A stretch of 62,992 bases of DNA, counting the filler, from Octopus bimaculoides (lineage: Eukaryota): NCBI RefSeq assembly GCF_001194135.2. It is 3 parts of 3 records of this genome, joined end to end, with 100 filler letters (N's around TTAATTAATTAA, not from the genome) between each part and the next. Parts side by side here need not be neighbours in the genome. Positions count along the whole stretch, not along the records: positions 1 to 30,501 come from NC_068985.1; 2 more parts are not named here. One strand, given 5' to 3'. A model generated the notes under the pieces. The model made no database searches. It saw only the letters and a list, made by a program, of their open reading frames with translations, and had not been told where the DNA came from. A program made the translations under genes and the position numbers. Position 1 is the first letter of the stretch, and each line of letters starts with the position of its first letter. Shown here one piece after another: positions 8,565-30,294 of this stretch.

Positions 8565-8606
8565 ACATGGATGATGCTAATGGTAACATTTCAAGGGAAC
8601 CTGATA
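8565..8606 (+). CDS. Micro-exon A1 (42 nt, phase 1-1): (D)MDDANGNISREPD; unknown Tyr-motif protein
   Basis: tttcttaaag|ACATGG...CCTGATA|gtaagt; open frame, length divisible by 3, repeated in paralogous units. Confidence 0.65.
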
Positions 8607-8734
8607 GTAAGTGTATAAACGATCCTTTAATACAATTACAATAATTAAAGCACAAGTCCACCCTTTTATTTCATTTTAGTTTCTGTCAGAGGCTGTGACA
8701 ATATGGGTGGAGGGGGTTTACTTGTTTGTTTTAG

Positions 8735-8771
8735 ACTCATTTGCCCAGCCCTGTCACTGGAATCAGTTTTG
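8735..8771 (+). pseudogene. Frameshifted copy of micro-exon D (37 nt)
   Basis: AG/GT intact but one extra G relative to the 36-nt copies at 15295 and 18012. Confidence 0.4.
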
Positions 8772-9113
8772 GTGAAGTTAGCAAAAATTTTGGCTTGCTC
8801 TTCCTTTGTGTAAAATATATAGCTTAACTACATTTCTATGCATGTACTTAAATACAACATTGAAAATATTTAGAATTCTACACATAATTTACACCTCTAT
8901 TAATCCTCATTAATAATCCAGCCCATACATATTCCTTGTAAGCCTTAACTGTGCAAGTAAACCAAACAAAGATATAATTCACATTAAATTCATTAGGTTT
9001 TTACTCAGGCAAGAGACATAAAGTGAGGAAAAGATTTGCAATGACGAATATGTCATGTTATAATCAGCTGTTGTTGTTGATAATTAACCACAATCAGCTT
9101 TGTTTGTTTTTAG

Positions 9114-9185
9114 ATACCTCTTGCTTGAAAGTAATTATGACAAATATTTTATGTCTCCAGCCATAATTGGGAATGGCTTTTAACG
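9114..9185 (+). pseudogene. Copy of candidate exon C (72 nt) with in-frame TAA at 9164-9166
   Basis: ttttag|ATACC...TAACG|gtaac; TAC (Tyr) of the 15626 copy is TAA here. Confidence 0.35.
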
Positions 9186-9724
9186 GTAACATGATTAATT
9201 TTAAATATCAACTAAACGTTTGAGTGGCAGAAATAGTAGAGTCAATAAATTAATTGTTTGGCATTAATTAATTTAGGTCCACAACATTCTGAGTTCAAAA
9301 CACAGAAAAGAAAATTTTATTCTGTGAACCACCCTTATAAGTACTAACTTTTATATAATTTCTCTTATACAATGAACATTTTGATTATGGAATAACATTT
9401 TTAAGGCCAATTTACTGAAGAACTTTTTTTCCAAGCACAAATTTCAAAATACCATTTTACTAAAATTACACTTTGTTTACTTTTGTTCATACAAAATGAA
9501 TTTATTAGGCAATTCTTTTCTTTTTCCCCAATACATCAATGAGAGGATAGTACATTCAGCTACGTTTGAATTCAAATATTTATTTGTTTCTAAATATATG
9601 TGTACATATATGACATATACAATATGTTATCCTATATGCTTAGTTACTTTCTATGCAATATCAAATTATTTAAATCATCCTCTCCAAACAATAAATATAC
9701 CTATTTTTATGTAATTTCTTGAAG

Positions 9725-9775
9725 AGCAATGCACTGAAATTAGTGATCTCAGATATTTATGGATGAAACAGCCAG
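9725..9775 (+). CDS. Micro-exon B1 (51 nt, phase 1-1): xQCTEISDLRYLWMKQP
   Basis: tttcttgaag|AGCAATG...CAGCCAG|gtaagt; in-frame 9-nt deletion at the 5' end relative to the 60-nt copies. Confidence 0.65.
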
Positions 9776-9891
9776 GTAAGTATAATCACTATTGATAATA
9801 CGTAAAGTGATCTTAGAAGAAGAGAAATAGAAAACTAGCAATCATGAAACATGTCACTCTTGATCTTTTGTCTCTTAATATATGCATACAT

Positions 9892-10112
9892 CTAAGGCGG
9901 TGCACTGGCAGAAACGTTAGCCTGCTGGGCAAAATGCTGAGCGGTATTTCATTTGCCTTTACATTCTGAGTTCACATTCTGCCGAGGTCGACTTTTCCTA
10001 TCATCCTTTTAGGATGGATAAATTAAATACCAGTAGCATACTGGGGTCGATGTAATTAACTAGCCCTGTCTCCAAATATTTCAGGCCTTGTGTCTAGAGT
10101 AGAAACCAAAAG
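9892..10112 (+). mobile_element. tRNA-derived SINE with 15-bp TSD AATATATGCATACAT
   Basis: Head GGCGGTGCACTGGCAGAAACG and B-box-like GAGTTCACATTC; TSD at 9877-9891 and 10113-10127. Confidence 0.85.
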
Positions 10113-10162
10113 AATATATGCATACATGCATGTTGTGTGAGAATGTTTAAGTCTATATCTTT

Positions 10163-10508
10163 TACCAATTTTGAAGTTTGACATGGCGAAGTCAAATCTG
10201 TGCGTACGCGCGTGAAGGAGAGAGAGCAAGAGAGAGAGAAAGAACGAGAGAGAGAAAGAAAGAGAGGGAGAAAGAAAGAGAGAGAGAAAGAAAGAAAGAG
10301 AGGGAGAAAGAAAGAGAGAGAGAAAGAAAGAAAGAAAGAGAGGGAGAAAGAAAGAAAGAAAGAAAGAGAGGGAGAAAGAAAGAAAGAGAGAGAGAAAGAA
10401 AGAAAGAATGGGAGAAAGAAAGAAAGAGAGAGAGAAAGAAAAGGGGATAAACAGAGTGTTTGCCAAGCGTCTAAAAAAAAAAAAAAATGAAAAAGTGGAA
10501 GAGGGAGA
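10163..10508 (+). mobile_element. Internal fragment of the same Helitron-like family as position 17+
   Basis: TTGAAGTTTGACATGGCGAAGTCAAATCTGTG...GA-rich tract...AAGTGGAAGAGGGA matches ~200-545. Confidence 0.6.
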
Positions 10509-11550
10509 NNNNNNNNNNNNNNNNNNNNNNNNNNNNNNNNNNNNNNNNNNNNNNNNNNNNNNNNNNNNNNNNNNNNNNNNNNNNNNNNNNNNNNNNNNNN
10601 NNNNNNNNNNNNNNNNNNNNNNNNNNNNNNNNNNNNNNNNNNNNNNNNNNNNNNNNNNNNNNNNNNNNNNNNNNNNNNNNNNNNNNNNNNNNNNNNNNNN
10701 NNNNNNNNNNNNNNNNNNNNNNNNNNNNNNNNNNNNNNNNNNNNNNNNNNNNNNNNNNNNNNNNNNNNNNNNNNNNNNNNNNNNNNNNNNNNNNNNNNNN
10801 NNNNNNNNNNNNNNNNNNNNNNNNNNNNNNNNNNNNNNNNNNNNNNNNNNNNNNNNNNNNNNNNNNNNNNNNNNNNNNNNNNNNNNNNNNNNNNNNNNNN
10901 NNNNNNNNNNNNNNNNNNNNNNNNNNNNNNNNNNNNNNNNNNNNNNNNNNNNNNNNNNNNNNNNNNNNNNNNNNNNNNNNNNNNNNNNNNNNNNNNNNNN
11001 NNNNNNNNNNNNNNNNNNNNNNNNNNNNNNNNNNNNNNNNNNNNNNNNNNNNNNNNNNNNNNNNNNNNNNNNNNNNNNNNNNNNNNNNNNNNNNNNNNNN
11101 NNNNNNNNNNNNNNNNNNNNNNNNNNNNNNNNNNNNNNNNNNNNNNNNNNNNNNNNNNNNNNNNNNNNNNNNNNNNNNNNNNNNNNNNNNNNNNNNNNNN
11201 NNNNNNNNNNNNNNNNNNNNNNNNNNNNNNNNNNNNNNNNNNNNNNNNNNNNNNNNNNNNNNNNNNNNNNNNNNNNNNNNNNNNNNNNNNNNNNNNNNNN
11301 NNNNNNNNNNNNNNNNNNNNNNNNNNNNNNNNNNNNNNNNNNNNNNNNNNNNNNNNNNNNNNNNNNNNNNNNNNNNNNNNNNNNNNNNNNNNNNNNNNNN
11401 NNNNNNNNNNNNNNNNNNNNNNNNNNNNNNNNNNNNNNNNNNNNNNNNNNNNNNNNNNNNNNNNNNNNNNNNNNNNNNNNNNNNNNNNNNNNNNNNNNNN
11501 NNNNNNNCAGCATCATCGGAATAAAATGTTTTTCCTATCAAACAGTTATC

Positions 11551-11589
<39 letters not shown>

Positions 11590-11769
11590 AGAAGAAAATG
11601 GATGGAATCCAGAGGTAGTATTCATCACCCAAGTACCCTAATTTTATCTACAGATCACTACAGTACATTGAAAAGATGGAAATAACATGTGAGGTACTGT
11701 GACCTCTTGGCAGAAACAGCTGTAAGAAACTGCTCTTCTTTCTCTGTTCTAGAAATGGTGGTATGGATA

Positions 11770-12490
11770 GAGAGAGTCTGCTTCGATGAGATGCAATTCG
11801 GTTTTGTGCCAGGTAGAAGCACCACTGATGCTATATTCCTGGTACGGCAACTGCAGGAGAAATACCTAGCCAAAGATAAACCCCTATACTTGGCTTTTGT
11901 TAACTTGGTGATAGCCTTTGACAGATACCCCCAATCCTTTATCTGGTGGGCGATGCGGAAACTGGGGATAGATGAGTAGTTAATAAGAGCTGTACAGGGA
12001 TGCTGTTAGTAAGGTAAGGGTTGACAATGAGTATAGTGAAGAATTCCAGGTAGAAGTAGGGGTTCACCAAGATCAGCCCTCATCCCCCTCTTATTCATCA
12101 TAGTCCTCCAGGCAATAACAGAAGGAGATTCTCTATGCTGATGACCTTGCTTTCATAGCAGGATCACTATCAGAACTAGAGCAAGGTTTAGAATCAAAGG
12201 GCCTTAGAGTCAATGTCACTAAGACCAAAGTCCTAGTAAGTAAGAAGGCGAACACATCACAAACTCCTTTAGATAGGTTTCCCTGCCCAATGTGTATAAA
12301 AGGTGTAGGTAGAAATTCTATAAGATGTACCTAGTGTAAGCTATGGATGCATAATAGGTGCAGCAACATCAAAGAGGTCACAGTACCTCACATGTTATTT
12401 CCATCTTTTCAATGTACTGTAGTGATCTGTAGATAAAATTAGGGTACTTGGGTGATGAATACTACCTCTGGATTCCATCCATTTTCTTCT

Positions 12491-12537
<47 letters not shown>

Positions 12538-13732
12538 GATAACTGTTTGATAGGAAAAACATTTTATTCCGATGATGCTGTAAAATAGGCCTTCCAAGAT
12601 TTTATTGACTCTGGATTGCCAGGCTTTTAAAGTTCTGGCCTGGACAAGCTACTACTGAAATGGCAAAAGTGTATTGACAATATGGGTGCATACTTTGATG
12701 AAATTATTTTGTATGATGCATATGTGCAAACTGCCATGCTAAACAGCAGTGAAACATGGACCATGACTGCTGAAGACATGCATAGGCTCAAAAGAAATAA
12801 AGCTAATATGATCCACTTGATGTGTAATGTCAGTGTGCACACAGTACAAAGAGTAAGCGCCCTAAGTGAAATGTTGGACATAAGAAGCATCAGATGCGGT
12901 GTGTAAGAGAGACAACTGTGCTGGTATGGTCATATGTTGCATATGGATGAGAAGAGCTGTGTGAAGAAGTGTCACTCCCTAACAGTGGAACGAATCCATG
13001 GAAGAAGGAGAGTCACTAAGACATGGGATGAGGTCAGGGTTAGGGTGAAGCATGACCTTCAAACATTGGGCTTCACTGAGGCAATGACAATAGACCGAGA
13101 CCTCTGAAGATATGCTGTGATTGAGAAGACCCAGTAAATAAAGTGAGATCACAGCTGTAGCCTACACCAGTGTTGCATAACCAGCCCATTTAATTAAGTA
13201 CCTTTGAATTGTGGGGCAACATTCTGCGCTTGAGGAGACCTGTTGAGTCAAGTAAAATCAAAATCAAAATCAAATTATAATCAAATGGAATTGTAGTTGT
13301 GGCAGATGCCAGTGCCGCTTGACTGGCTCCCGTACTGGTGGCATGCAATAAGCACCATGCATGCGTGGGTCGTTGCCAGTACTGCCTGACTGGCTTCCCA
13401 TGCTGGTGGCATGTAAAAAGCACCATCCAAACATGGTTGATGCCAGCCTCCCTGCCCCAACTGGTAGCACATAAAAAGTCATAACACATAAAATGCACCA
13501 TCCGATGTGGCCAAAGCCAGCTGCACCTAACTGGCTCCCATGCTAGTGGCATGTAAAAAGCATCTGCAACACACTTGGAATGGTTGGCATTAGGAAGGGC
13601 ATCCAGCTGTAGAAATACTGCCAGATCAGATTGGAGCCTGGTATAGCCTCCTGGCTTGCCAGTCCTCAATCAAATTGAAGAACCCAAGCCAGCATGGAAA
13701 ACAGGCATTAAACAATGATGATGATGACGATG
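11770..13732 (+). mobile_element. RTE-clade LINE, decayed and interrupted at ~12372-12710
   Basis: RT motifs DEMQFGFVPGRSTTDAIFLVRQLQEKYL...LYLAFV, LLYADDL-like sequence, AMLNSSETWTMTAEDM; family 3' tail ending in (GAT)n at ~13714-13732. Confidence 0.9.
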
Positions 13733-13756: not shown

Positions 13757-13793
<37 letters not shown>

Positions 13794-14310
13794 GTGTGNN
13801 NNNNNNNNGGGGGGGGGTGAATGAATCTGTCTAGTTAGTCTGCATTCTGTAGAATTACTTGGCATTAATCAATATAGAACCACAACATTCCAAGATAAAA
13901 ACACATCAGAGTCAATTTTAGACTGTAAACCACCCATTAAGTACTTTTATATAATTTCTCTAATAAAATTAACAGTTTCAATATGGAATAAAATTTCTAA
14001 GGCCAATTTACTTAAAAACTTTCTCTCCAAACACAAATTCTGAAATGCAATTTTACCAAAATTACTTAAATGAATTTATTAGGCAGTTCTTTTCTATTTC
14101 TCAGTACATCAATGAGAGGATAAAGAACTCATACCCTACATTCAGCTTAGTTAGAATTCAAATATTCATTTTTGTCTAAATATATGTGTATATATATGAA
14201 ATATGCAGTATGTTTTCCTATATGCTTAGTTACTTTCTATGCAATATCAAATTATTTAAATCATCCTCTCCAAACAACAAATATACCTATTTTTATGCAA
14301 TTTCTTGAAG

Positions 14311-14370
14311 CTGTGGAAGAACAATGCACGGAAATTAGTGATCTCAGATATTTATGCATGAAACAGCCAG
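14311..14370 (+). CDS. Micro-exon B2 (60 nt, phase 1-1): (A)VEEQCTEISDLRYLCMKQP
   Basis: tttcttgaag|CTGTGG...CAGCCAG|gtaagt; open frame. Confidence 0.7.
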
Positions 14371-14616
14371 GTAAGTATAATCACTATTGATAATACGTAA
14401 AGTGATCTTAGAAGAACAAAAATAGAAAGCTAACAATCATGAAACATGTCATGCTTAAACTTTTGTCTCTTAATATATGCATACATACATGTATGTGTGT
14501 GAGAATGTTTAAGATTATTTCATTGGCATTTCTTATGACAGTGTCAGTACATTACTAACATAATTTAAATGTTATTTCTAGCAATGCTATTTATTCTTTT
14601 TTTAAATTTCTTAAAG

Positions 14617-14658
14617 ACATGGATGGTGCTTACATTAATGATTCACAGACACCTGGTA
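14617..14658 (+). CDS. Micro-exon A'1 (42 nt, phase 1-1): (D)MDGAYINDSQTPG
   Basis: tttcttaaag|ACATGG...CCTGGTA|gtaagt; open frame. Confidence 0.65.
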
Positions 14659-15128
14659 GTAAGTATATAAGCAATTCATTAATAAAATTACATTCATTGG
14701 ACTGTGGTCACTACCTTGAAGGGTTTAGTCTAACAAATCCACCAAGATACTTATTATTTTTAAACTTAGTACTTATTCTATTGAATTCCTTTGCCAAACC
14801 ACTAAGTTCAGTGAATGTGAACTAACTAACTCTGACTGTCAAGTGATGGTTGGAGATGAACACAAAGACACACATACTCTTGTGTATTTATAAATACATA
14901 CACACACGTAAGTATGTATGTATGTATGTATGTATGTATGTATGTATGTATGTATATATAGATGTGTGTGTGTGTGTGAGTGTGTGTGTGTGTGTGTGAG
15001 TGTGTGTGTGTGTGCATGTGTTTGAGTCTATCTCATTAGTCTTTATTCTGGTAGATTCAACACAATACAATATATTTTAAATATTATTTATAGCTATACA
15101 TTATATTCATTCTTTTTATTTCTTAAAG

Positions 15129-15170
15129 ATATGGATGATGTTCATGGTAACATTTCAAGGAAATCTCATA
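15129..15170 (+). CDS. Micro-exon A2 (42 nt, phase 1-1): xMDDVHGNISRKSH
   Basis: tttcttaaag|ATATGG...TCTCATA|gtaagt; open frame. Confidence 0.65.
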
Positions 15171-15294
15171 GTAAGTGTATAAACGATCCTTTAATACAAT
15201 TACAATAATTAAAGCACAGGTATGCCCTTTTATTTTAGTTTCTGTCAGAGGCTGTGACAATATGGGTGGAGTGGGGTTTACTTGTTTGTTTTAG

Positions 15295-15330
15295 ACTCAT
15301 TTCCCAGCCCAGTCACTGCAAACAGTTCTG
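15295..15330 (+). CDS. Candidate micro-exon D2 (36 nt, phase 1-1): xSFPSPVTANSS
   Basis: ttgtttgttttag|ACTCAT...AGTTCTG|gtgaag; symmetric and open, but the donor is weaker. Confidence 0.45.
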
Positions 15331-15625
15331 GTGAAGTTAGTAAAAATTTTGGCTTGTTCTTACTTTGTGTAAAATATATGGCTTAATAATATGTGTATGT
15401 ATATACTTAAGTACAACATTAAAGATATTAAAATTCAACACAAAATTTGCACTTTCATTAATAATACAGCACATAAATATTCTTTGTAAGCCTTAGCTGT
15501 ACAAGTAAACCAAGCAAAGATATAATTTACAATAAATTCACTAGATATTTACTCAGGCAAGACACATAAAATATGGAAGAGATTTGCAATGGTGAATATG
15601 TCAAATCATAATTAGTTGTTTTTAG

Positions 15626-15697
15626 ATAGCTCTAGCTTGAAAGTAAATATGCAAAATATCTTATTTCTCAAGCCATACCTTGAAATGGCTTTTCATG
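15626..15697 (+). CDS. Candidate exon C2 (72 nt, phase 1-1): (D)SSSLKVNMQNILFLKPYLEMAFH
   Basis: tttttag|ATAGC...TTCATG|gtaaca; open and symmetric, but the other three paralogues are disabled. Confidence 0.4.
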
Positions 15698-16246
15698 GTA
15701 ACACAATCAATTTTAAATAACAACTAAACTTTTGACTGGCAGAAATAGTAGAACCAATGAATTAATTACTTGGCATTAATTAATTTGGGTCCACACCTTT
15801 TTCTAACTCAAAACACATAAGAGTAAATTTTATCCTGTGAACCACCCTTTAAGTACTTTTATTTAATTACTCTAATAAAATTAGCAGTTTGATTCTGGAA
15901 TAAAATTTTGAAGGCCAATTTACTGAAGAACCTTCTCTCCAAACACAAATTCCGAAATTATATTTTACCAGAATTTCTCTTGTTTCATTTTGTTCATACA
16001 AATTGAATTTCTTAGGCAATTCTGTTTTTTTTTTTCCTGATATATCAATGAGAGGATAAAGAAATCATGCTCTACATTCAGTTTGGTTGGAATTCAAGTA
16101 TTTGTTTCTAAATATATGTGTATGTATATATATGAAATATACAATATGTTTTCCAATATTTTTAGTTACTTTCTGTGCAATATCAATATATTTAAATCAT
16201 CCTCTCCAAACAATAAATATAGCTATCTTTATGTAATTTCTTGAAG

Positions 16247-16306
16247 CTGTTGAAAATGAATATGCTGAAATTAGTGATCTCAGATATTTATGGATGAAAC
16301 AGCCAG
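16247..16306 (+). CDS. Micro-exon B3 (60 nt, phase 1-1): (A)VENEYAEISDLRYLWMKQP
   Basis: tttcttgaag|CTGTTG...CAGCCAG|gtaagt; open frame. Confidence 0.72.
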
Positions 16307-16422
16307 GTAAGTATAATCACTATTGATAATACGTAAAGTGATCTTAGAAGAAGAGAAATAGAAAACTAGCAATCATGAAACATGTCACTCTTGATCTTTT
16401 GTCTCTTAATATATGCATACAT

Positions 16423-16643
16423 GTAAGGCGGTGCACTGGCAGAAACGTTAGCTTACTGGGCAAAATGCTGAGCGGTATTTCATTTGCCTTTACATTCTGA
16501 GTTCACATTCTGCCGAGGTCGACTTTTCCTATCATCCTTTTAGGGTGGATAAATTAAATACCAGTAGCATACTGGGGTCGATGTAATTAACTAGCCCTGT
16601 CTCCAAATATTTCAGGCCTTGTGTCTAGAGTAGAAACCAAAAG
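16423..16643 (+). mobile_element. tRNA-derived SINE, same insertion as 9892 copied by unit duplication
   Basis: Near-identical to 9892-10112, same flanks and TSD (16408-16422, 16644-16658). Confidence 0.85.
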
Positions 16644-16786
16644 AATATATGCATACATGCATGTTGTGTGAGAATGTTTAAGTCTATATCTTAAATATTT
16701 CTTATGAGTGTGTGAGCACAATACTAACATAGTTTAAATGTTATTTCTAGCAATGCTATTCATTCTTTTTTTTTAATTTCTTAAAG

Positions 16787-16828
16787 ACATGGATGATGCT
16801 TACGTTAATGATTCACAGACACCTGGTA
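16787..16828 (+). CDS. Micro-exon A'2 (42 nt, phase 1-1): (D)MDDAYVNDSQTPG
   Basis: tttcttaaag|ACATGG...CCTGGTA|gtaagt; open frame. Confidence 0.68.
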
Positions 16829-17518
16829 GTAAGTATATAAGCAATTCATTAATAAAATTACATCATTAGAGAAAGAGTTACCAAATATCTTGGTTCATTC
16901 TTTCTTTGAGTAGTATAGGTAGCTTAATATATGTCATTTATTTTTTACTTGTTTTAGTTATTGAAATGAAGTCATGCTAAGGCACCATCTTGAAGGGTTA
17001 AGTCCAAATTCACCTAAATACTTATTATTTTTAAGCTTAGTACTTATTCTATTGGTTACCTTTGCCAAATTGCTAAGTTGTTTGGATGTTAACAAACTAA
17101 CACTGATTGTCATGTGGTGGTGGAAGATGAACACAAAGACACACATATTCCTCTGTATATATATATATATATATNNNNNNNNNNNNNNNNNNNNNNNNNN
17201 NNNNNNNNNNNNNNNNNNNNNNNNNNNNNNNNNNNNNNNNNNNNNNNNNNNNNNNNNNNNNNNNNNNNNNNNNNNNNNNNNNNNNNNNNNNNNNNNNNNN
17301 NNNNNNNNNNNNNNNNNNNNNNNNNNNNNNNNNNNNNNNNNNNNNNNNNNNNNNNNNNNNNNNNNNNNNNNNNNNNNNNNNNNNNNNNNNNNNNNNNNNN
17401 NNNNNNNNNNNNNNNNNNNNNNNNNNNNNNNNNNNNNNNNNNNNNNNNNNNNNNNNNNNNNNNNNNNNNNNNNNNNNNNNNNNNNNNNNNNNNNNNNNNN
17501 NNNNNNNNNNNNNTATAA

Positions 17519-17688
17519 TTTCTTTACTGCCCACAAGGGGCTACACATAGAGGGGACAAACAAGGACAGACAAACGGATTAAGTTGATTATATCGACCCC
17601 AGTGCGTAGCTGGTACTTATTTAATCGACCACAAAAGGATGAAAGGCAAAGTCAACCTCGGTAGAATTTGAACTCAGAATGTAGCGGC
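17519..17688 (-). mobile_element. tRNA-derived SINE (5' part missing)
   Basis: Reverse complement reads CTGAGTTCAAATTCTACCGAGGTTGACTTTGCC...GGGGTCGAT...TTGTGGGCAGTAAAGAAA, the same family core as other copies. Confidence 0.8.
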
Positions 17689-17843
17689 ATATGTATGTAT
17701 GTATATATAGATGTGTGTCTTTGTGTGTGTGTCTGCATGTGTGTGTGTGTGTGTGCATGCATTTGAGTCCATCCCATTAGACTTTATCCTGGTATATTCA
17801 GCACAATACAATATATTTTAAATATTATTCTCATTTCTTAAAC

Positions 17844-17885
17844 ACATGAACTATGCCTATGTTAACATTTCAAGGAAACCTGATA
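17844..17885 (+). pseudogene. Pseudo-exon A3 (DMNYAYVNISRKPD) with both splice sites lost
   Basis: Frame intact, but the acceptor reads aaac instead of aaag and the donor reads ctatgt instead of gtaagt. Confidence 0.6.
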
Positions 17886-18011
17886 CTATGTATCTAAACA
17901 ATCCTTTAATAAAATTACAATAATTAAAGGACAAGTTCACCTCTTTATGTTATTTTTATTTCTGTTAGAGGCCGTGACCATACCGGGTGGGGTGCTACTT
18001 GCTTGTTTTAG

Positions 18012-18047
18012 TCTCGTTTTCCAGCTCTGTCACTGGAATCAGTTCTG
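18012..18047 (+). CDS. Candidate micro-exon D3 (36 nt, phase 1-1): xSFSSSVTGISS
   Basis: ttgttttag|TCTCG...AGTTCTG|gtgaag; symmetric and open. Confidence 0.45.
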
Positions 18048-18384: not shown

Positions 18385-18456
18385 ATAGCTCTAGATTGGA
18401 AGTAAATATGCAAAATATCTTATTTCTCAAGCCATACCTTGGAATGGCTTTTTATG
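18385..18456 (+). pseudogene. Copy of candidate exon C with acceptor AG>AA
   Basis: tttttaa|ATAGCT...TTTATG|gtaaca; the frame is still open. Confidence 0.35.
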
Positions 18457-18989: not shown

Positions 18990-19049
18990 CTGTGGAAAAT
19001 CAATATGCTGAAATTAGTCATCCCAAATATTTATGCATGAAAAAGCGAG
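18990..19049 (+). CDS. Micro-exon B4 (60 nt, phase 1-1): (A)VENQYAEISHPKYLCMKKR
   Basis: tttcttgaag|CTGTGG...AAGCGAG|gtaagt; open frame. Confidence 0.72.
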
Positions 19050-20315: not shown

Positions 20316-20346
<31 letters not shown>

Positions 20347-20347
<1 letters not shown>

Positions 20348-22386: not shown

Positions 22387-23329
22387 TATACATGATATAT
22401 ACATATATANNNNNNNNNNNNNNNNNNNNNNNNNNNNNNNNNNNNNNNNNNNNNNNNNNNNNNNNNNNNNNNNNNNNNNNNNNNNNNNNNNNNNNNNNNN
22501 NNNNNNNNNNNNNNNNNNNNNNNNNNNNNNNNNNNNNNNNNNNNNNNNNNNNNNNNNNNNNNNNNNNNNNNNNNNNNNNNNNNNNNNNNNNNNNNNNNNN
22601 NNNNNNNNNNNNNNNNNNNNNNNNNNNNNNNNNNNNNNNNNNNNNNNNNNNNNNNNNNNNNNNNNNNNNNNNNNNNNNNNNNNNNNNNNNNNNNNNNNNN
22701 NNNNNNNNNNNNNNNNNNNNNNNNATATTATGAAAAATATGTTAGGGATAGAGGAAAGGTATTAAATGAGAGAGAGGAAGAAGTAAAAGTGTAAAATGTA
22801 ACCAAGTTAATCTATGACTTTGTATGTATTACTTTCTCTCTCTCTCCCTCTCCCTCATTTACTCTTACTCTCTATAAGAACGCTGGTACAGGAAGAAGGG
22901 AAGAAATATAAAAGTTGCTAGAAACAACAGCCAAATCTCCCTTAAATCACACAAAGTAAACGGAATTTTAAAAAATCTAATTACTGCACTGGAAAGTTCA
23001 CATCGAGAAAATTCCATTGATGTAAAAATTTTTACGAAAAAGTGGTAAATGTGGATTTCTATAAACTTTAAAAACGGCTTCACACAGACACACAACTTCA
23101 GCTTTATATATTAAGATATACATGATATATACATATATACATTATATATACATATACATATATACATTATATCTATATATACTTATATACATTATATATA
23201 TACATATATACATTATATATATACATATATACATTATATATACATACTTTATATATATATATATACATAATATCTATATGTATTATTTTTATATACTTTT
23301 ATTTTTTATTTTATTTTATCTAGTTTCAG

Positions 23330-24190: not shown

Positions 24191-24918
24191 GGACAAGCTA
24201 CCACTGAAATGATAAAAGTGTATTGACAATATGGGTGCATACTTTGATGCATACTTTGATGCATAAAGATATTCCTTGTATTTATAAAACATTAGCAAAC
24301 TTTCTTTTCTTTTCTACAAATTTCATACTTGATGGCCTTATACACACACACGTGCACACACAGACACACATATATGTATATATAGTTATGTGTGTGTCTG
24401 TGTCTGCAAGTGTCTGTAAGTCTGCATTCTGTAGAATTAATTGGCATTAATTAATATAGGTTCACAGCATTCCGAGATTAAAACACATAAGAGTCAATTT
24501 TATACTGTGAACCACCCCGTAAGTACTTTTATATAATTTCTCTAATAAATTTAGCAGTTTCAATATGGAATAAAATTTCAAAATTTATGCCTGAAAAAGC
24601 TAGGTAAGTATAATCACTTCTGATGATACATAACATGATCTTTGAGTATTATAGGCAGCTTAATATATGACTTTTATCTTTTGTTTCACTCATTCGACTG
24701 TCAGCACTACCTTGAAGGGTTTAGTCTAACAAATCCACCTAAATACTTATTATTTTTAAACTTAGTACTTATTCTATTGATTCCCTTTGTCAAACCGCTA
24801 AGTTGTGTGGATGTGAACAAACGAACACTGCTTGTCATGTGGTGGTAGAAGATGACCGTAAAGACACACATATACTTCTGTATATATAAATATATTATAT
24901 ATATATATATATATATAT

Positions 24919-25979
24919 GTGAAAAACTAGAGGTAGTCGATAGCTTCCGCTATCTGGGCGACCAAGTTAGTAGTGGGGGTGGGTGCGCTGAAAGTGTAGC
25001 TGCTAGAATAAGAATAGCCTGGGCAAAGTTTAGAGAGCTCTTACTCCTGCTGGCAACAAAGGGACTCTCACTCTGAGTAAAAGGCAGACTGTATGACGCA
25101 TGCGTATGAACAGCCATGCTACATGGCAGTGAAACATGGGCTGTAACTGCTGAGGACATACGTAAGCTCGCAAGGAATGAAGCCNNNNNNNNNNNNNNNN
25201 NNNNNNNNNNNNNNNNNNNNNNNNNNNNNNNNNNNNNNNNNNNNNNNNNNNNNNNNNNNNNNNNNNNNNNNNNNNNNNNNNNNNNNNNNNNNNNNNNNNN
25301 NNNNNNNNNNNNNNNNNNNNNNNNNNNNNNNNNNNNNNNNNNNNNNNNNNNNNNNNNNNNNNNNNNNNNNNNNNNNNNNNNNNNNNNNNNNNNNNNNNNN
25401 NNNNNNNNNNNNNNNNNNNNNNNNNNNNNNNNNNNNNNNNNNNNNNNNNNNNNNNNNNNNNNNNNNNNNNNNNNNNNNNNNNNNNNNNNNNNNNNNNNNN
25501 NNNNNNNNNNNNNNNNNNNNNNNNNNNNNNNNNNNNNNNNNNNNNNNNNNNNNNNNNNNNNNNNNNNNNNNNNNNNNNNNNNNNNNNNNNNNNNNNNNNN
25601 NNNNNNNNNNNNNNNNNNNNNNNNNNNNNNNNNNNNNNNNNNNNNNNNNNNNNNNNNNNNNNNNNNNNNNNNNNNNNNNNNNNNNNNNNNNNNNNNNNNN
25701 NNNNNNNNNNNNNNNNNNNNNNNNNNNNNNNNAAAAGACACCATTTCGAGCATGGCCGTTGCCAGTACCGCCTGACTGGCCTTCGTGTGGGTGACACGTA
25801 AAAGCACCCACTACACTCTCTGAGTGGTTGGCGTTAGGAAGTGCATCGAGGTGTAGAAACTCTGCCAAATTAGATTGGAGCCTGGTGTTGCCATCCGGTT
25901 TCACCAGTCCTCAGTCAAATCGTCCAACCCATGCTAGCATGGAAAGCGGACGTTAAACGATGATGATGATGATGATGAT
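24919..25979 (+). mobile_element. 5'-truncated RTE LINE spanning a gap, in (TA)n
   Basis: EKLEVVDSFRYLGDQVSSGGGCAESVAARIRIAWAKFREL, MLHGSETWAVTAED; 3' tail ends CGTTAAAC(GAT)n. Confidence 0.9.
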
Positions 25980-26358
25980 ATATATATATATATATACGTA
26001 CACACACATACATGTATGTATACATATATATGTGTGTGTGTGCAATCAGTTCTGGTGAAGTTAGTAAAAATTTTGCTTATTCTTCCTTTGCATAAAATAT
26101 ATGGTTTAATGACATATGTATGTATGTATTTAAATATGACATTGAAAATATTAGAATTCTACACAAAATTTGCAACTTTATTTATCCTCATTAATAATCC
26201 AGCCAACAAATATTCTTTGTAGGCCCTAGCTGTACACCTAAACCAAGCAAATATATAATTCACATTAAATTGACTAAAATTTCACTCAAGCAAGACACAT
26301 AAAGTATTGAAGAGATTTGCAATGGTGAATATGTTACATCATAATCAGTTGTTCTCAT

Positions 26359-26431
26359 ATAGCTCTAGCTTGAAAGTAATTATGAAAAATATCTTATTTC
26401 TCAAGCCATACTTTGGAATGGTTTTTTTATG
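26359..26431 (+). pseudogene. Copy of candidate exon C, acceptor lost (AT) and +1 frameshift (73 nt)
   Basis: gttctcat|ATAGCT...TTTTTTTATG|gtaaca. Confidence 0.35.
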
Positions 26432-26976
26432 GTAACATGATTAATTTTAAATATCAACTAAACTTTTGACTGACAGTAATGGTAGAATTGATAAATCAAT
26501 TACTTGGAATCAATTAATTTAGGCTTACACCTTTCTAACTCAAAACATATAAGAGAAAATTTTATTCTGTGAACCACCCTGTAAGTACTTTTATATAATT
26601 ACTCTAATATTAGCAGCTTGATTATGGAATAAAATTTTGAAGGCCAATTTACTGAAGAACCTTCTCTCCAAACACAAATTCTGAAATGACATTTTACCAG
26701 AATTACTCTTGTTTCCTTTAGTTCATAGAAAATGAATTCATTAAGCAATTCTTTTTTTTTTTCCCCAACATATCAATGAAAGGATAAAAAATTCATGCTC
26801 TACATTCAGCCTGGTTGGAATTCAAGTATTTATTTGTTTCTAAATATACGTGTATGTATATATATGGAATATACTATGTTTTCCAATATTTTTAGTTACT
26901 TTCTGTGCAATATCAATATATTTAAACCATCCTCTCCAAACTATAAATATAGCTATCTTTATGTAATTTCTAGAAG

Positions 26977-27036
26977 CTGTGGAAGATCAATATGCTGAAA
27001 TTAGTCATCCCAAATATTTATGCATGAAAAAGCCAG
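26977..27036 (+). CDS. Micro-exon B6 (60 nt, phase 1-1): (A)VEDQYAEISHPKYLCMKKP
   Basis: tttctagaag|CTGTGG...AAGCCAG|gtacgt; open frame; the acceptor is NAGNAG (tag aag). Confidence 0.7.
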
Positions 27037-27281
27037 GTACGTATAATCACTATTGATAATATATAACGTGATCTTAGAAGAACAAAAATAGAAAGCTAAC
27101 AATCATGAAAAATATCACTCTTGAACTTTTGTCTGTTAATATATGCATACCTGCATGTATATGTGTGAGAATGTTTAAGTCTTTTTCATTAGTATTTCTT
27201 ATGACAGTGTCAACACAATACTAACATAATTTAAATGTTATTTCTAGCAATGCTATTTATTCTTTTTTTAATTTCTTAAAG

Positions 27282-27323
27282 ACATGGATGATGCTTACAT
27301 TAATGATTCACAGACACCTGGTA
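27282..27323 (+). CDS. Micro-exon A'3 (42 nt, phase 1-1): (D)MDDAYINDSQTPG
   Basis: tttcttaaag|ACATGG...CCTGGTA|gtaagt; open frame. Confidence 0.68.
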
Positions 27324-27894
27324 GTAAGTATATAAGCAATTCATTAATAAATTTACATTCATTAGAGCAAGAGTTACCAAATATCTTGGTTCATTCTTTC
27401 TTTGAGTAGTATAGGCAGCTTAATGTATGTCTTTTATTTTTTTACTTTTTCAGCCATTGAACTCTAGCTATGCTAATGTACCAGTTTGAAGGGTTTAGTC
27501 CAACAAATACACCAAAATACTTATTATTTTTAAGCCTAGTGCTTATTGCATTGGTTAACTTTGCCAAACCGCTAAGTTGCGTTGATGTGAACAAACCAAC
27601 ACTGATTGTCCTGTGGTGGTGGAAGACAAACACAAAGACACATACTCTTCTGTATATATAAACACACACACTCACGCACACACATATAGGTGAGTTGAGT
27701 TAGAGTTTAAAATAACCGTTTAAGGGACGGAAGTATTCAATACGCTTCTGGTATATTACCTATATTTAACTATGGACATACATAAGCAAACATATTATGT
27801 TCATAAGTTATAGGTAAAAACAAGGATAAACATGGGTTTATCAAGAATCAAAATATAAAGAAAACAGAAAATGGAGAAGTATTGATTAACAACA

Positions 27895-28393
27895 ATTGAC
27901 TTACTCCAATTATTATTTATTAATTCAATGCAAACAGACTGCATCCCATCTAACAGATGTTTCTACTTTCAATGTTATATGGTTTGCCATTGATATTCAA
28001 AATATGTAAAAAAATATCAATCATATTTGGTAATAAAACCGATCTGAAACAAGGAGCTTCATCAGAGTGAAGAATAAATAGAGTAGAACAAAGGAAAAGT
28101 TGAATATGGTTGTTATCATAGCATTTTGCTTGTGTGTCTCTTTTGGCCATTAAGTAAAAGGCTACAGCCATATTCAACTTTACCCTTGTTCTTCTTGATG
28201 CTCTTCCTCTCTATTCATTCTTCACTCTGATGATGTTCCTTGTTTCAGATTGGTTTTATTACCAAATATGATTGATATTTTTACATATTTTGAATATCAA
28301 TAGCAATACCATATAACATTGAAAGTAGAAACATCTGTTAGATGGGATGCAGTCTATTTGCATTGAATTAATAAATAATTGTTGTAAGTCAAT
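27895..28393. repeat. Long foldback inverted repeat (~220-bp arms, ~50-nt spacer)
   Basis: 27895-28113 is the near-exact reverse complement of 28164-28393 (e.g. CATCCCATCTAACAGATGTTTCTACTTTCAATGTTATATGG vs CCATATAACATTGAAAGTAGAAACATCTGTTAGATGGGATG). Confidence 0.95.
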
Positions 28394-28635
28394 AAATCAG
28401 TCTTTTTCCATTTTCTATTTTCTTTACACACACACACAAACACACGCACATATAATATATATGTATAGTTATGTGTGTATGTATGTGTGTCTGTCTGTCT
28501 GTGTGAGTGTCTACGTGTGTGCATGTGTGAGTGTGTGTGAGTTTGTCTAGTTAGTCTGTATTCTGGTAGTTTCAGTACAATACAAAATATTTTAAATATT
28601 ATTTATAGCCATGAATTATAATCATTATTTCTTAG

Positions 28636-28676
28636 ACATGGATGATGCTTATATTAATATTTCAAAGAAACCTGAT
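28636..28676 (+). pseudogene. Probable pseudo-exon A4 (DMDDAYINISKKPD), donor region altered, 41 nt
   Basis: tttcttag|ACATGG...CCTGAT|gtagtg; one base shorter than paralogues, so frame-shifting if used. Confidence 0.5.
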
Positions 28677-28817
28677 GTAGTGTATATAAGCAATTCTTTA
28701 AAAAAAGCTTTGTACTGACTTTAATGGTTTCTTTTTCCAAACTGCTAAGTTCCACGAATGTGAACAAACCAATAAGTGGTGGTGGGATATGAACACAAAG
28801 ACACACACATTCTTATT

Positions 28818-28849
<32 letters not shown>

Positions 28850-29542
28850 CATATATGATGAAAGAAAACTTTGAATGATTTNNNNNNNNNNNNNNNNNNN
28901 NNNNNNNNNNNNNNNNNNNNNNNNNNNNNNNNNNNNNNNNNNNNNNNNNNNNNNNNNNNNNNNNNNNNNNNNNNNNNNNNNNNNNNNNNNNNNNNNNNNN
29001 NNNNNNNNNNNNNNNNNNNNNNNNNNNNNNNNNNNNNNNNNNNNNNNNNNNNNNNNNNNNNNNNNNNNNNNNNNNNNNNNNNNNNNNNNNNNNNNNNNNN
29101 NNNNNNNNNNNNNNNNNNNNNNNNNNNNNNNNNNNNNNNNNNNNNNNNNNNNNNNNNNNNNNNNNNNNNNNNNNNNNNNNNNNNNNNNNNNNNNNNNNNN
29201 NNNNNNNNNNNNNNNNNNNNNNNNNNNNNNNNNNNNNNNNNNNNNNNNNNNNNNNNNNNNNNNNNNNNNNNNNNNNNNNNNNNNNNNNNNNNNNNNNNNN
29301 NNNNNNNNNNNNNNNNNNNNNNNNNNNNNNNNNNNNNNNNNNNNNNNNNNNNNNNNNNNNNNNNNNNNNNNNNNNNNNNNNNNNNNNNNNNNNNNNNNNN
29401 NNNNNNNNNNNNNNNNNNNNNNNNNNNNNNNNNNNNNNNNNNNNNNNNNNNNNNNNNNNNNNNNNNNNNNNNNNNNNNNNNNNNNNNNNNNNNNNNNNNN
29501 NNNNNNNNNGGATATGAACACAAAGACACACACATTCTTATT

Positions 29543-29574
<32 letters not shown>

Positions 29575-30234
29575 CATATATGATGAAAGAAAACTTTGAA
29601 TGATTTGCCCTTGTTTTTTCTCGTCCCTTTTTGTATCATCTAACTCTCTGGATGTCTTATTGTTGCTCACAGTAGGACTGAACTCAGAACCATGTGTTCG
29701 GAAAATGAACTTCTTACTGCACCAGAAAACCTTTGAAAATGTTGAAATTTCGTAACATGTACAAGAGACCTCTTGCAGACATCCCTTTTTAACTTTGATA
29801 TTATACCTTTTTTGATTCTTACACTTAATACTGTAATTTATAAGTGTATATGCTGTACGTTTTATTTATACAGATAAACAAATAAGTGGCAGAAATAGTA
29901 CAATACTGTACTAAATGCTGACAGAATGAAATTTAGTGTCAGTATATTCTGAGATTATATCACAATGAAGTAAATATTGTCCAATCAGCTTCTCAATAAG
30001 TACTACTTTTACATAATTATTAGCATTTTGCTCATAGAATAGAATTTTGAGTGCTATTTACTGAGGAACCCTCTTTCCAAACATTCATATTGAAATAGCG
30101 TATTAACCCAGATTACTCTGTTTCCTCTTGTTTATTCCAAATAGATTTATTAGGCAATACATAATAAATTTATTAGGCAATACATTTTAGTAAAACAATA
30201 ATTATGCCAATTTTTTAAATGTATTTTCTTGAAG

Positions 30235-30294
30235 CTGTGGAAGTACAATATGCTGAAGTAAGTGAGCACATATATTTGGAAATAAAACAACGAG
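30235..30294 (+). CDS. Micro-exon B7 (60 nt, phase 1-1), most divergent: xVEVQYAEVSEHIYLEIKQR
   Basis: ttttcttgaag|CTGTGG...AACGAG|gtaagt; length, frame, splice sites and both Tyr are kept although the flanking intron is clearly diverged. Confidence 0.72.

What the first reader, a model, noticed from the sequence alone, without database searches (positions are those of the whole stretch)
8565..30294. Hidden array of symmetric micro-exons encoding a modular phosphotyrosine-motif tail
Seen: 14 AG/GT-bounded segments of 36, 42, 51, 60 or 72 nt, all phase 1-1, inside tandemly duplicated units; every A and B exon except B6 (gtacgt) has a gtaagt donor. Joined in order (705 nt) they read, without a stop, DMDDANGNISREPD-KQCTEISDLRYLWMKQP-AVEEQCTEISDLRYLCMKQP-DMDGAYINDSQTPG-NMDDVHGNISRKSH-NSFPSPVTANSS-DSSSLKVNMQNILFLKPYLEMAFH-AVENEYAEISDLRYLWMKQP-DMDDAYVNDSQTPG-ISFSSSVTGISS-AVENQYAEISHPKYLCMKKR-AVEDQYAEISHPKYLCMKKP-DMDDAYINDSQTPG-TVEVQYAEVSEHIYLEIKQR. 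All 14 Tyr fall in YAEI/V (4), YLxM/I (7) or Y[IV]N (3), mostly preceded by acidic residues. Every exon ends in A or G, so no junction can create a stop and any skipping pattern stays in frame. Established: pYxN is the Grb2 SH2 consensus, pYxxM the PI3K p85 consensus, and (D/E)YxEI resembles the Siglec membrane-distal ITIM-like motif; YAEI-x4-YLxM is more tightly spaced than a canonical ITAM (x6-8). Inference: this is the cytoplasmic tail of a receptor or adaptor (possibly immune or neural) expanded by exon-cassette duplication, allowing combinatorial splicing of signalling outputs rather than of ectodomains. The upstream TM or ectodomain exons are not visible in the window.
Basis: partly seen in the sequence, partly recalled or inferred. 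Interest (0 to 1): 0.92.

Follow-up and report, generated by a model that had tools for sequence, protein, structure and literature searches.

The report
Duplicated micro-exons encoding a tyrosine-motif repeat
Eleven of the fourteen proposed tiny exons are really spliced together in RNA and encode an acidic, tyrosine-rich repeat with no known relatives; it looks like a docking region for signalling proteins, but that role, its place in the cell and any combinatorial splicing remain unproven.

Summary
All 14 AG/GT-bounded segments are at the stated coordinates. RNA contigs from two public runs of the same organism show exon-confined coverage and GT..AG junctions. These join 11 of them in genome order: six 'A' exons (51 or 60 nt) and five 'B' exons (42 nt). 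The same chain links to one exon upstream and one downstream of the window. The three other segments (36, 36 and 72 nt) have zero RNA depth and are skipped by direct junctions. Their paralogous copies carry frameshifts, a stop or lost acceptors, so they are intronic look-alikes.

All assembly gaps lie in introns that RNA junctions bridge. The 187-aa product is open in one frame only. It is acidic and hydrophilic, has no membrane segment, and has no homologue, Pfam or PDB match. Its 13 Tyr sit in YAEI/V, YLxM/I and Y[IV]N contexts.

The array grew by tandem duplication of a unit of about 2.7 kb. Exons are more conserved than introns in old comparisons, and all live copies keep the frame.

Not shown: that this is a cytoplasmic receptor or adaptor tail, because the 5' exons lie outside the window. 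Combinatorial splicing is not shown either: every junction seen fits consecutive inclusion, though skipping is not excluded. A glycosylated, sulfated extracellular repeat is a live rival.

The parts
8565..8606 (+). B exon, N-type, 42 nt (NMDDANGNISREPD; Tyr replaced by Asn). It is joined upstream to an exon outside the window that ends ...CTGATGAAACTATTTCATACAAGCAAAACA.
   Evidence: Junction 8606|9725 (GT..AG) in X25 and X28; the same upstream loose end appears in both runs; that upstream sequence is absent from the window.
9725..9775 (+). A exon, 51 nt (KQCTEISDLRYLWMKQP). It has an in-frame 9-nt deletion at its 5' end relative to the other A exons.
   Evidence: a 142-nt contig runs from this exon's end into exon 14311 and then exon 14617.
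14311..14370 (+). A exon, 60 nt (AVEEQCTEISDLRYLCMKQP).
   Evidence: RNA depth confined to the exon; junction 14370|14617 (GT..AG) in X25 and X28.
14617..14658 (+). B exon, Y-type, 42 nt (DMDGAYINDSQTPG).
   Evidence: a 120-nt contig joins it to 15129.
15129..15170 (+). B exon, N-type, 42 nt (NMDDVHGNISRKSH; Tyr replaced by His).
   Evidence: Junction 15170|16247 (GT..AG, skips 1076 nt) in X25 and X28.
16247..16306 (+). A exon, 60 nt ((T)VENEYAEISDLRYLWMKQP).
   Evidence: contig piece 16247-16294 with 0 mismatches.
16787..16828 (+). B exon, Y-type, 42 nt (DMDDAYVNDSQTPG).
   Evidence: An A-exon end is followed by ACATGGATGATGCTTACGTTAATG, which is specific to this exon, in X28.
18990..19049 (+). 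A exon, 60 nt ((T)VENQYAEISHPKYLCMKKR).
   Evidence: Depth confined to the exon; preceded by a Y-type B exon end; 19049|26977 join in a 75-nt contig in X25 and X28.
26977..27036 (+). A exon, 60 nt (AVEDQYAEISHPKYLCMKKP), with a GTACGT donor.
   Evidence: Junction 27036|27282 (GT..AG) in X25 and X28.
27282..27323 (+). B exon, Y-type, 42 nt (DMDDAYINDSQTPG).
   Evidence: followed by CTGTGGAA, the start of an A exon.
30235..30294 (+). A exon, 60 nt and the most diverged copy ((T)VEVQYAEVSEHIYLEIKQR). It is joined downstream to a B-like exon outside the window (ACATGGATGTTGCTTACATTAATGTTCCAA... = DMDVAYINVPKFLEITSE).
   Evidence: A 142-nt X25 contig holds a Y-type B exon end, this whole exon, and 60 nt of the next exon (the continuation also appears).
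15295..15330 (+). It is not used and is intronic.
   Evidence: RNA depth 0 and skipped by 15170|16247; the paralogue at 8735 is 37 nt.
15626..15697 (+). It is not used and is intronic.
   Evidence: X25 and X28 depth 0 and skipped; paralogues: 9114 has a TAA, 18385 and 26359 have lost the AG.
18012..18047 (+). It is not used and is intronic.
   Evidence: RNA depth 0 over 17800-18547; a B exon end is joined directly to 18990.
17844..17885 (+). Dead B copy (MNYAYVNISRKPD). Acceptor is AC and donor is CT.
   Evidence: RNA depth 0.
28636..28677 (+). B copy with an intact AG and reading frame (DMDDAYINISKKPD) but a lost GT donor.
   Evidence: not in the main transcript, because exon 30235 is preceded by ...ACACCTGGTA.
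24580..24645 (+). Truncated relic of an A exon's 3' end plus its donor flank.
   Evidence: bypassed by the 19049|26977 join.

Best explanation
Shown:
- Window 8565-30294 is an internal part of one expressed protein-coding gene on the + strand.
- Eleven symmetric phase 1-1 micro-exons are present, each 42, 51 or 60 nt long. All junctions seen fit splicing in genomic order into one open frame.
- There are two cassette types. A has the pattern VExx[Y/C][A/T]E[I/V]Sxxx-YLx[M/I]K. B has the pattern [D/N]MD[D/G][A/V][Y/N/H]xNxS.
- The cassettes were multiplied by tandem duplication of a unit of about 2.7 kb. The unit runs: GT-microsatellite, B, about 1.1 kb of intron, A, B. Some copies have since died.
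- The product is an acidic, hydrophilic and probably disordered repeat with 13 Tyr in 187 aa.

Inferred:
- The repeat most likely works as a multivalent docking scaffold. Its tyrosines would be phosphorylated; upstream acidic residues suit tyrosine kinases.
- Three partner classes could then be recruited. Grb2/Drk-type SH2 domains would bind pY-[I/V]-N. PI3K p85-type SH2 domains would bind pY-L-x-M. Src-, SHP-2- or Csk-type SH2 domains would bind pY-A-E-[I/V].
- On this view, the number and mix of docking modules is set by cassette gain, cassette loss and Tyr-codon change. No splicing choice has been demonstrated so far.
- Whether the region hangs from a transmembrane receptor or belongs to a soluble adaptor is unknown.
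For: Splicing: coverage is confined to the exons and GT..AG junctions appear in two independent RNA runs.

Coding:
- One frame is open over 645 nt, while the other two frames have 7 or more and about 50 stops.
- All live A and B copies keep a length divisible by 3, including an in-frame 9-nt deletion in exon 9725. The intronic C and D look-alikes carry frameshifts and stops.
- Exons are more conserved than their flanks in old comparisons. Exon 30235 against the other A exons is 0.715 versus 0.556 (p=3e-7). The three Y-type B exons are 0.968 versus 0.761 (p=1e-9).

Not a high-copy transposable element: in the genomic-like run X9, depth over the exons (9-91) is close to that of the unique flanks (about 7-47). 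A neighbouring repeat reaches 400-500.

Motif constraint: between the oldest A copy and the rest, both Tyr and the residues at +1 and +3 are kept (YAE[I/V], YLx[M/I]) while the residues between vary.

A cytosolic location is favoured by five Cys at variable positions (W/C and Y/C exchanges) and by the conserved hydrophobic residue at Y+3.

From established knowledge rather than tests here: pYxN is the Grb2 SH2 motif, pYxxM the p85 motif, pYEEI the Src-family optimum, and [IVL]xpY[TVA]x[IVL] the SHP-2 N-SH2 motif.
Against: - No transmembrane segment, signal peptide or domain is visible, and the 5' exons are outside the window.
- No homologue exists from which to transfer a function.
- Because the exons are duplicates, only three ancestral Tyr motifs are independent. 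Motif enrichment is therefore weak statistically; my rough estimate is about 0.03 by chance.
- dN/dS among paralogues is 0.4-1.4 and is uninformative.
- Several live exons have lost the Tyr: 8565 (N), 15129 (H), 9725 and 14311 (C).
- All five B exons keep an N-x-S sequon even where the Tyr is lost. Acidic Tyr contexts also fit tyrosine sulfation. Phase 1-1 modules are typical of extracellular proteins.
- Expression was seen in only 2 of about 20 RNA runs, and their tissues are unknown because the metadata are coded.
Confidence: 0.5

Rival explanations
1. The repeat is extracellular or secreted. It would be an acidic stalk or matrix-like region that is N-glycosylated at the conserved N-x-S of each B cassette and tyrosine-sulfated at the acidic Tyr sites. 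Under this reading it is not an intracellular docking region.
For: - There are five N-x-S sequons, one in every live B exon. They are retained even in the N-type B exons that lost the Tyr, and in both dead copies.
- D/E residues immediately upstream of the Tyr (DMDDAY, VENEY) fit the sulfation context.
- Symmetric phase 1-1 exons are the classical class for extracellular modules (established knowledge).
- No homologue or domain contradicts this reading.
Against: - Five Cys sit at non-conserved positions and interchange with W or Y. Free, variable cysteines are unusual in secreted repeats.
- The sequon's Asn is the same residue as the +2 Asn of YxN, so its conservation does not discriminate between the readings.
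- The conserved hydrophobic Y+3 (I/V, M/I) has no role in sulfation.
- No signal peptide is available to check.
Confidence: 0.2
2. The exons are real and coding, but the region is a young, fast-evolving disordered spacer with no motif-specific function. The SH2-like patterns would be inherited by duplication from one chance ancestor.
For: - dN/dS among paralogues is near 1 in many pairs.
- The Tyr codon is lost in four live exons.
- There are only three independent ancestral motifs.
- No homologues were found anywhere.
- The recent pair 16247/18990 differs more in the exon (0.87) than in the flanks (0.97), p=0.002.
Against: - Older comparisons show exons clearly better conserved than flanks.
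- All live copies preserve frame and splice sites, while the intronic look-alikes decay.
- Tyr, +1 and +3 are the positions kept in the most diverged A copy.
- The 16247/18990 excess can be explained as a mosaic. The 18990 exon is 97% identical to the 26977 exon although their flanks are only 76-88% identical, which suggests gene conversion.
Confidence: 0.2
3. The array provides combinatorial or mutually exclusive splicing of signalling cassettes. Different cells would include different subsets of exons.
For: By structure, any subset of the 42, 51 and 60-nt phase 1-1 exons stays in frame, and no junction codon can be a stop because all exons end in A or G. Several junctions cannot be assigned uniquely because paralogous exon ends are identical, so some skipping would be invisible in this data.
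Against: - Contigs carry three consecutive exons: 9725-14311-14617 and 14617-15129-16247. Every exon shows a single kind of neighbour, consistent with constitutive, colinear inclusion.
- Mutually exclusive use is therefore excluded for those exons.
- The data are assembled contigs, which drop rare isoforms, so this is absence of evidence only.
Confidence: 0.2
4. The unit is a dispersed repeat or transposable element, or a non-coding spliced RNA, and the open frame is accidental.
For: The introns are full of repeat fragments, including a reverse-transcriptase relic and high-depth RNA over intronic repeats. The whole unit, introns included, is duplicated.
Against: - Exon DNA depth is close to that of the unique flanks.
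- RNA depth on the exons is low and exon-confined.
- A single open frame of at least 645 nt is present, with in-frame indels only.
Confidence: 0.03

Closest known systems
PECAM-1 (CD31) cytoplasmic domain
   Same: In PECAM-1 the tail is encoded by a run of short exons (exons 9-16). Individual Tyr-bearing exons exist, such as exon 14 with 19 aa, about the size of the A exon here. Exons 10-16 are alternatively spliced to change signalling (PMC2132561). The last A exon here, VQYAEV, resembles the PECAM-1 ITIM VQYTEV; that resemblance is from my own knowledge.
   Different: The PECAM-1 tail exons are not recent tandem duplicates of one another, and there is no sequence homology. An Ig ectodomain and a transmembrane segment are known for PECAM-1 but not seen here. 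Alternative splicing was not observed here.
Transmembrane and cytosolic adaptor scaffolds with multiple SH2-docking tyrosines (LAT, PAG/Cbp, Gab/Dos, IRS, BCAP)
   Same: These are disordered acidic regions that carry many YxN and/or YxxM sites acting as multivalent docking platforms. In LAT, several tyrosine motifs lie on separate small exons (my own knowledge, not tested here).
   Different: There is no homology. No PH or PTB domain, transmembrane segment or palmitoylation motif is visible. Here the three motif classes alternate in a regular cassette pattern created by recent segmental duplication.
Tandem exon-duplication arrays with mutually exclusive splicing (for example Dscam1 exon clusters)
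   Same: Both are tandem arrays of paralogous exons of equal length and phase inside one gene.
   Different: Here neighbouring paralogous exons are spliced together into the same RNA. The array therefore lengthens the protein rather than offering alternatives.
ITAM- and ITIM-bearing immunoreceptors
   Same: All have paired tyrosines with a hydrophobic residue at +3. One exon (30235) matches the ITIM pattern VxYxxV.
   Different: The spacing is YxxI-x4-YxxM, where ITAM needs x6-8 and L/I. Three of the four YAE[I/V] sites have N or D at -2 rather than I/V/L/S.

Membership tests
ITAM | Yxx[L/I]-x6-8-Yxx[L/I] | tested here: not met
   The spacing is x4 in all A exons, and the second motif is YLxM in 5 of 6.
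ITIM-bearing inhibitory receptor tail | [I/V/L/S]-x-Y-x-x-[I/V/L] motif | tested here: inconclusive
   Only exon 30235 (VQYAEV) fits. The others have N or D at -2 (NEYAEI, NQYAEI, DQYAEI).
ITIM-bearing inhibitory receptor tail | Motif lies C-terminal to a transmembrane helix of a receptor with an ectodomain | not testable with these tools
   The upstream exon is outside the window. There is no hydrophobic stretch in the 187 aa (max KD19 0.02).
SH2-docking scaffold (LAT/Gab/IRS-like, functional class) | Multiple YxN and/or YxxM sites in a disordered region | tested here: met
   There are 3 Y[IV]N sites, plus 1 in the downstream exon, and 5 YLxM sites. GRAVY is -0.96 and pI 4.5. This is a pattern match only.
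SH2-docking scaffold (LAT/Gab/IRS-like, functional class) | Tyrosines are phosphorylated and bind SH2 proteins | not testable with these tools
   This needs phosphoproteomics or pull-downs.
SH2-docking scaffold (LAT/Gab/IRS-like, functional class) | Sequence homology to a known adaptor family | tested here: not met
   No hit at E<=10 among 5.8 billion proteins, none above threshold in Pfam, and none in PDB.
Mutually exclusive tandem exon array (Dscam-like) | Only one exon of the cluster is included per transcript | tested here: not met
   Contigs contain A-A-B and B-B-A runs of adjacent paralogous exons.
Cassette-exon (combinatorial) alternative splicing | Junctions that skip one or more A or B exons | tested here: inconclusive
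   None was seen. However, only assembled contigs of two runs were available, and several exon ends are identical between paralogues.
Neuropeptide or repeat-peptide precursor | Repeats individually flanked by dibasic cleavage sites, with a signal peptide | tested here: not met
   Only one KKR and one KQR occur among the 11 cassette ends; the others end in KQP, KKP, TPG, EPD or KSH. The signal peptide is not testable.
Dispersed transposable element | High genomic copy number | tested here: not met
   Exon word depth in the genomic-like run X9 is 9-91, against about 7-47 for unique flanks and 400-500 for a nearby repeat.

The most novel reading that the evidence does not exclude
This could be a lineage-restricted signalling scaffold that is probably missing from protein databases. 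Its complement of Grb2-, PI3K- and Src/SHP-2-type docking modules would be built and remodelled by duplication, death and Tyr-codon turnover of a two-cassette micro-exon unit. Because every cassette is symmetric, the complement could also be tuned per tissue by exon skipping. That would make it an intracellular counterpart of ectodomain exon arrays.
Probability: 0.15. Interest if true: 0.75.

Novelty: new member of a known kind. Interest (0 to 1): 0.5.

Why it matters
If the phosphotyrosine-docking reading holds, the locus would show signalling valency evolving almost in real time. Live, Tyr-less and dead cassettes sit side by side in 22 kb. It would also add a protein that homology-based annotation cannot find. 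It is a concrete test case for how short linear motifs multiply through exon duplication in a disordered region. More practically, the result shows that micro-exon arrays of 42-60 nt can be recovered from raw sequence and validated with public RNA data. It also shows that splice-site and open-frame look-alikes inside the same duplicated unit (here 3 of 14) need RNA or paralogue checks.

Tried and rejected
- Protein homology: two searches with the spliced peptide, at E<=0.01 and E<=10, found nothing. Pfam gave only a sub-threshold Nesprin-3 hit at E=0.12. PDB gave nothing.
- Extending the locus: the 30-nt upstream exon end and the downstream exon were searched in the window, including all 12-mers, with no match. 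An exact look-up of 10 window ORFs, meant to fetch flanking contig DNA, found none in the collection.
- Raw RNA runs X24, X26 and X27: about 0 depth on the exons, with signal only from microsatellites, so they were uninformative.
- A wide read-laying over 15053-20906 was swamped by simple-repeat joints and had to be repeated on clean sub-stretches.
- dN/dS among paralogues was too noisy with 40-57 sites.
- Rfam found nothing in the window.
- Literature searches for cephalopod micro-exons or ITIM found nothing relevant to this locus.
- The organism could not be named because the run metadata are coded.

Full report
**Sequence check.** The piece runs from 1 to 30501, is 35.5% G+C and is rich in microsatellites. 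It contains eight runs of N. Two of them, 25185-25732 and 28882-29509, were not listed in the finding. Each segment is preceded by a pyrimidine tract and AG and followed by GT. Lengths are 42, 51, 60, 42, 42, 36, 72, 60, 42, 36, 60, 60, 42 and 60 nt. I call the 51 and 60-nt type A (6 copies), the 42-nt type B (5), the 36-nt type C (2) and the 72-nt type D (1). Ten of the eleven A and B exons have a GTAAGT donor. The exception, GTACGT, follows A exon 26977-27036. C has GTGAAG and D has GTAACA.

**RNA evidence.** Public runs of the same organism were found. Names are coded, so the species cannot be stated. Three deep raw RNA runs (X24, X26, X27) show essentially no coverage of the exons. Two RNA runs held as assembled contigs, X25 and X28, do express the locus.

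- On clean sub-stretches, depth is confined to the A and B exons and is zero in the introns.
- Canonical GT..AG junctions are reported at 8606|9725, 14370|14617, 15170|16247 and 27036|27282. Each appears in both runs.
- A 142-nt contig reads the end of a W-type A exon, then all of 14311-14370, then the start of 14617.
- A 120-nt contig reads the end of 14617, then all of 15129-15170, then 16247-16294.
- A 75-nt contig joins ...AAAAAGCGAG, which is unique to 18990-19049, to CTGTGGAAGATC, which is unique to 26977.
- Exon 16787 is specifically preceded by an A-exon end.
- Exons 18990 and 30235 are each preceded by a Y-type B exon end.
- Exon 8565 is preceded in both runs by ...CTGATGAAACTATTTCATACAAGCAAAACA. 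This sequence is not in the window, even as 12-mers.
- Exon 30235 is followed by ACATGGATGTTGCTTACATTAATGTTCCAA..., a further B-like exon beyond the window.

The gene therefore continues on both sides. Positions 1-8564 are intron, which is an inference.

Some donors cannot be told apart because paralogous exon ends are identical. This applies to 9775 versus 16306 and to the three Y-type B exon ends. The chain is the colinear, parsimonious reading. Every acceptor is unique and is shown to be used.

**Gaps.** Every gap lies inside an intron that an RNA join spans.

| RNA join | Gaps spanned |
|---|---|
| join into 14311 | 10509-11507, 13799-13808 |
| join into 18990 | 17175-17513 |
| 19049\|26977 | 20907-21437, 21890-21899, 22410-22724, 25185-25732 |
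| join into 30235 | 28882-29509 |

The frame and exon order therefore do not depend on the unread letters. Constitutive hidden exons are excluded, but rare ones are not.

**The three segments that fail.** Segments C (15295-15330 and 18012-18047) and D (15626-15697) have zero RNA depth in X25 and X28. The junction 15170|16247 and the B-to-18990 join skip them.

- C at 8735 is 37 nt long, which shifts the frame.
- C at about 26019 is truncated.
- D at 9114 has an in-frame TAA.
- D at 18385 has AA instead of AG.
- D at 26359 has AT instead of AG, plus an indel.

These segments are intron sequence that happens to be open and AG/GT-bounded in some copies.

**The product.** The 11 exons total 561 nt. 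Together with the RNA-derived flanks (645 nt) they are open in one frame only, and the other two frames are full of stops. At this base composition, a stop-free run of 187 codons has a probability of about 4e-7, ignoring the non-independence of duplicates. The peptide is:

NMDDANGNISREPD-KQCTEISDLRYLWMKQP-AVEEQCTEISDLRYLCMKQP-DMDGAYINDSQTPG-NMDDVHGNISRKSH-TVENEYAEISDLRYLWMKQP-DMDDAYVNDSQTPG-TVENQYAEISHPKYLCMKKR-AVEDQYAEISHPKYLCMKKP-DMDDAYINDSQTPG-TVEVQYAEVSEHIYLEIKQR

Its properties are:

- pI 4.5 and GRAVY -0.96.
- The maximum 19-residue hydropathy is 0.02, so there is no membrane segment.
- There are 13 Tyr: YAEI x3, YAEV x1, YLxM x5, YLEI x1 and Y[IV]ND x3.
- There are 5 N-x-S sequons, all in B exons.
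- There are 5 Cys at variable positions.

No relatives were found among 5.8 billion proteins, even at E<=10. Pfam gave no hit above threshold and PDB gave none.

**Origin and constraint.** A self-comparison shows a tandemly repeated unit. The offset between the third and fourth units is 2749 bp. The unit runs: GT-microsatellite, N-type B, about 1.1 kb of intron (holding C and D), A, Y-type B. Copies or partial copies lie at 8348-10161, 13853-14899, 14912-17174, 17690-19279, 26041-27669 and 28456-30294, at 70-89% identity. Introns are duplicated together with the exons.

- Dead copies are a B copy at 17844 (AC...CT), a B copy at 28636 (donor lost) and a truncated A at 24580.
- All live copies keep a length divisible by three. 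This includes an in-frame 9-nt deletion in exon 9725.
- In old comparisons, exons are better conserved than 200-nt flanks. Exon 30235 against the other A exons is 0.715 versus 0.556 (p=3e-7). The three Y-type B exons are 0.968 versus 0.761 (p=1e-9).
- One recent pair goes the other way. For 16247 versus 18990 the exon is 0.87 and the flanks 0.97 (p=0.002). Meanwhile the 18990 exon is 97% identical to the 26977 exon although their flanks are only 76-88% identical. This mosaic is best explained by gene conversion or recombination.
- dN/dS among paralogues (0.4-1.4) is uninformative on so few sites.
- Genomic depth over the exons in run X9 is comparable to the unique flanks, so this is not a high-copy element.

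**Interpretation.** That these are real coding micro-exons is shown. What the peptide does is inference. The three conserved Tyr contexts match textbook SH2 specificities. These are pYxN for Grb2, pYxxM for PI3K p85, and pY-[A/E]-E-I for Src-family SH2 domains. VxYAxV also fits the SHP-2/ITIM pattern. This rests on established knowledge and was not tested here.

- In favour: in the most diverged A copy, the Tyr and the residues at +1 and +3 are what is kept. Acidic residues precede each Tyr. The freely varying cysteines favour a cytosolic location.
- Against over-reading: only three ancestral motifs are independent. Four live exons have lost their Tyr. The N-x-S sequon is conserved even where the Tyr is not. 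Acidic Tyr contexts also suit sulfation. Phase 1-1 modules are typical of extracellular proteins.

I therefore put the phosphotyrosine-docking scaffold first (about 0.5). An extracellular glycosylated and sulfated repeat follows (about 0.2), as does a largely unconstrained spacer (about 0.2). A receptor tail cannot be asserted, because no transmembrane or ectodomain exon is reachable. Combinatorial splicing is structurally possible, since all exons are symmetric and all end in A or G. It has no support in the data, and mutually exclusive use is excluded by contigs carrying adjacent paralogous exons.

**Comparison with known systems.** The nearest architectural analogue is the PECAM-1 cytoplasmic domain. 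It is encoded by short exons 9-16, of which 10-16 are alternatively spliced. Its exon 14 encodes 19 aa and carries a functional Tyr (PMC2132561). Functionally the repeat resembles multi-tyrosine scaffolds such as LAT, Gab or IRS, though that is my own knowledge. It is not a member of any of these by sequence. It fails the ITAM spacing test, and only one exon fits the ITIM pattern.

**Verdict.** This is a real locus that is probably missing from protein databases. It belongs to a known kind of system: short linear motifs multiplied by exon duplication in a disordered region. The finding is about four-fifths right as an observation. Its functional claims remain plausible but open. Interest is moderate.

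Noticed in passing
window 11508-11708 and 12372-12580: A near-perfect (98-100%) inverted repeat of about 200 nt starts exactly at the edge of gap 10509-11507. It encloses a reverse-transcriptase fragment (ORF 11689-11979, PF00078-type hits). It is either a foldback insertion or a palindromic mis-assembly next to the gap.
   Followed up: partly
window 22156-22409 and 22886-23139: A 254-nt direct duplicate at 99.6% identity brackets gap 22410-22724. It looks like an assembly redundancy around the gap rather than biology.
   Followed up: no
window 954-1099 (+) and 21929-22089 (-): Two interstitial telomere-like arrays, (TTAGGG)n and (CCCTAA)n, lie in opposite orientation inside introns.
   Followed up: no
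window 25185-25732 and 28882-29509: Two further assembly gaps lie inside the finding's range but were not listed in the scan program's note. Both are in introns bridged by RNA joins.
   Followed up: yes
window 18990-19049 versus 16247-16306 and 26977-27036: The pattern is a mosaic. The 18990 exon matches the 26977 exon (97%), while its flanks match those of 16247 (96-98%). This suggests gene conversion or recombination between cassettes.
   Followed up: partly
window 16425-16620, 17013-17174, 19169-19364, 20149-20906: These intronic stretches have very high RNA word depth (hundreds to tens of thousands) in all RNA runs. They are presumably fragments of abundantly transcribed dispersed repeats and are unrelated to the gene's own expression.
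   Followed up: no
window 3098-3334 (-), 6199-7100 (-), 12682-12906 (+), 24852-25180 (+): These ORF fragments read like transposase or reverse-transcriptase remnants, for example ...YQQGNTTIHNSH......GPNYANLFVGCVE... and ...SETWTMTAEDMHRLKRNKA.... They are decayed mobile elements in the introns, judged by eye only.
   Followed up: no
window 9776-9817, 14371-14412, 16307-16348, 19050-19091, 27037-27078: The first 40 nt or so of the intron after five A exons (gtaagtataatcactattgataatacgtaaagtgatcttaga) are 92-100% identical, in some pairs more so than the exons themselves. The motif gatcttaga also persists after the old copy at 30295. This may be a splicing-control element or simply recent duplication.
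   Followed up: no
window 8565-8606 and 15129-15170: The codon aligned with the B-cassette Tyr is AAT (Asn) in one live exon and CAT (His) in the other. It is TAT in both dead N-type copies (17844, 28636). The Tyr was therefore lost in the copies that stayed spliced.
   Followed up: partly
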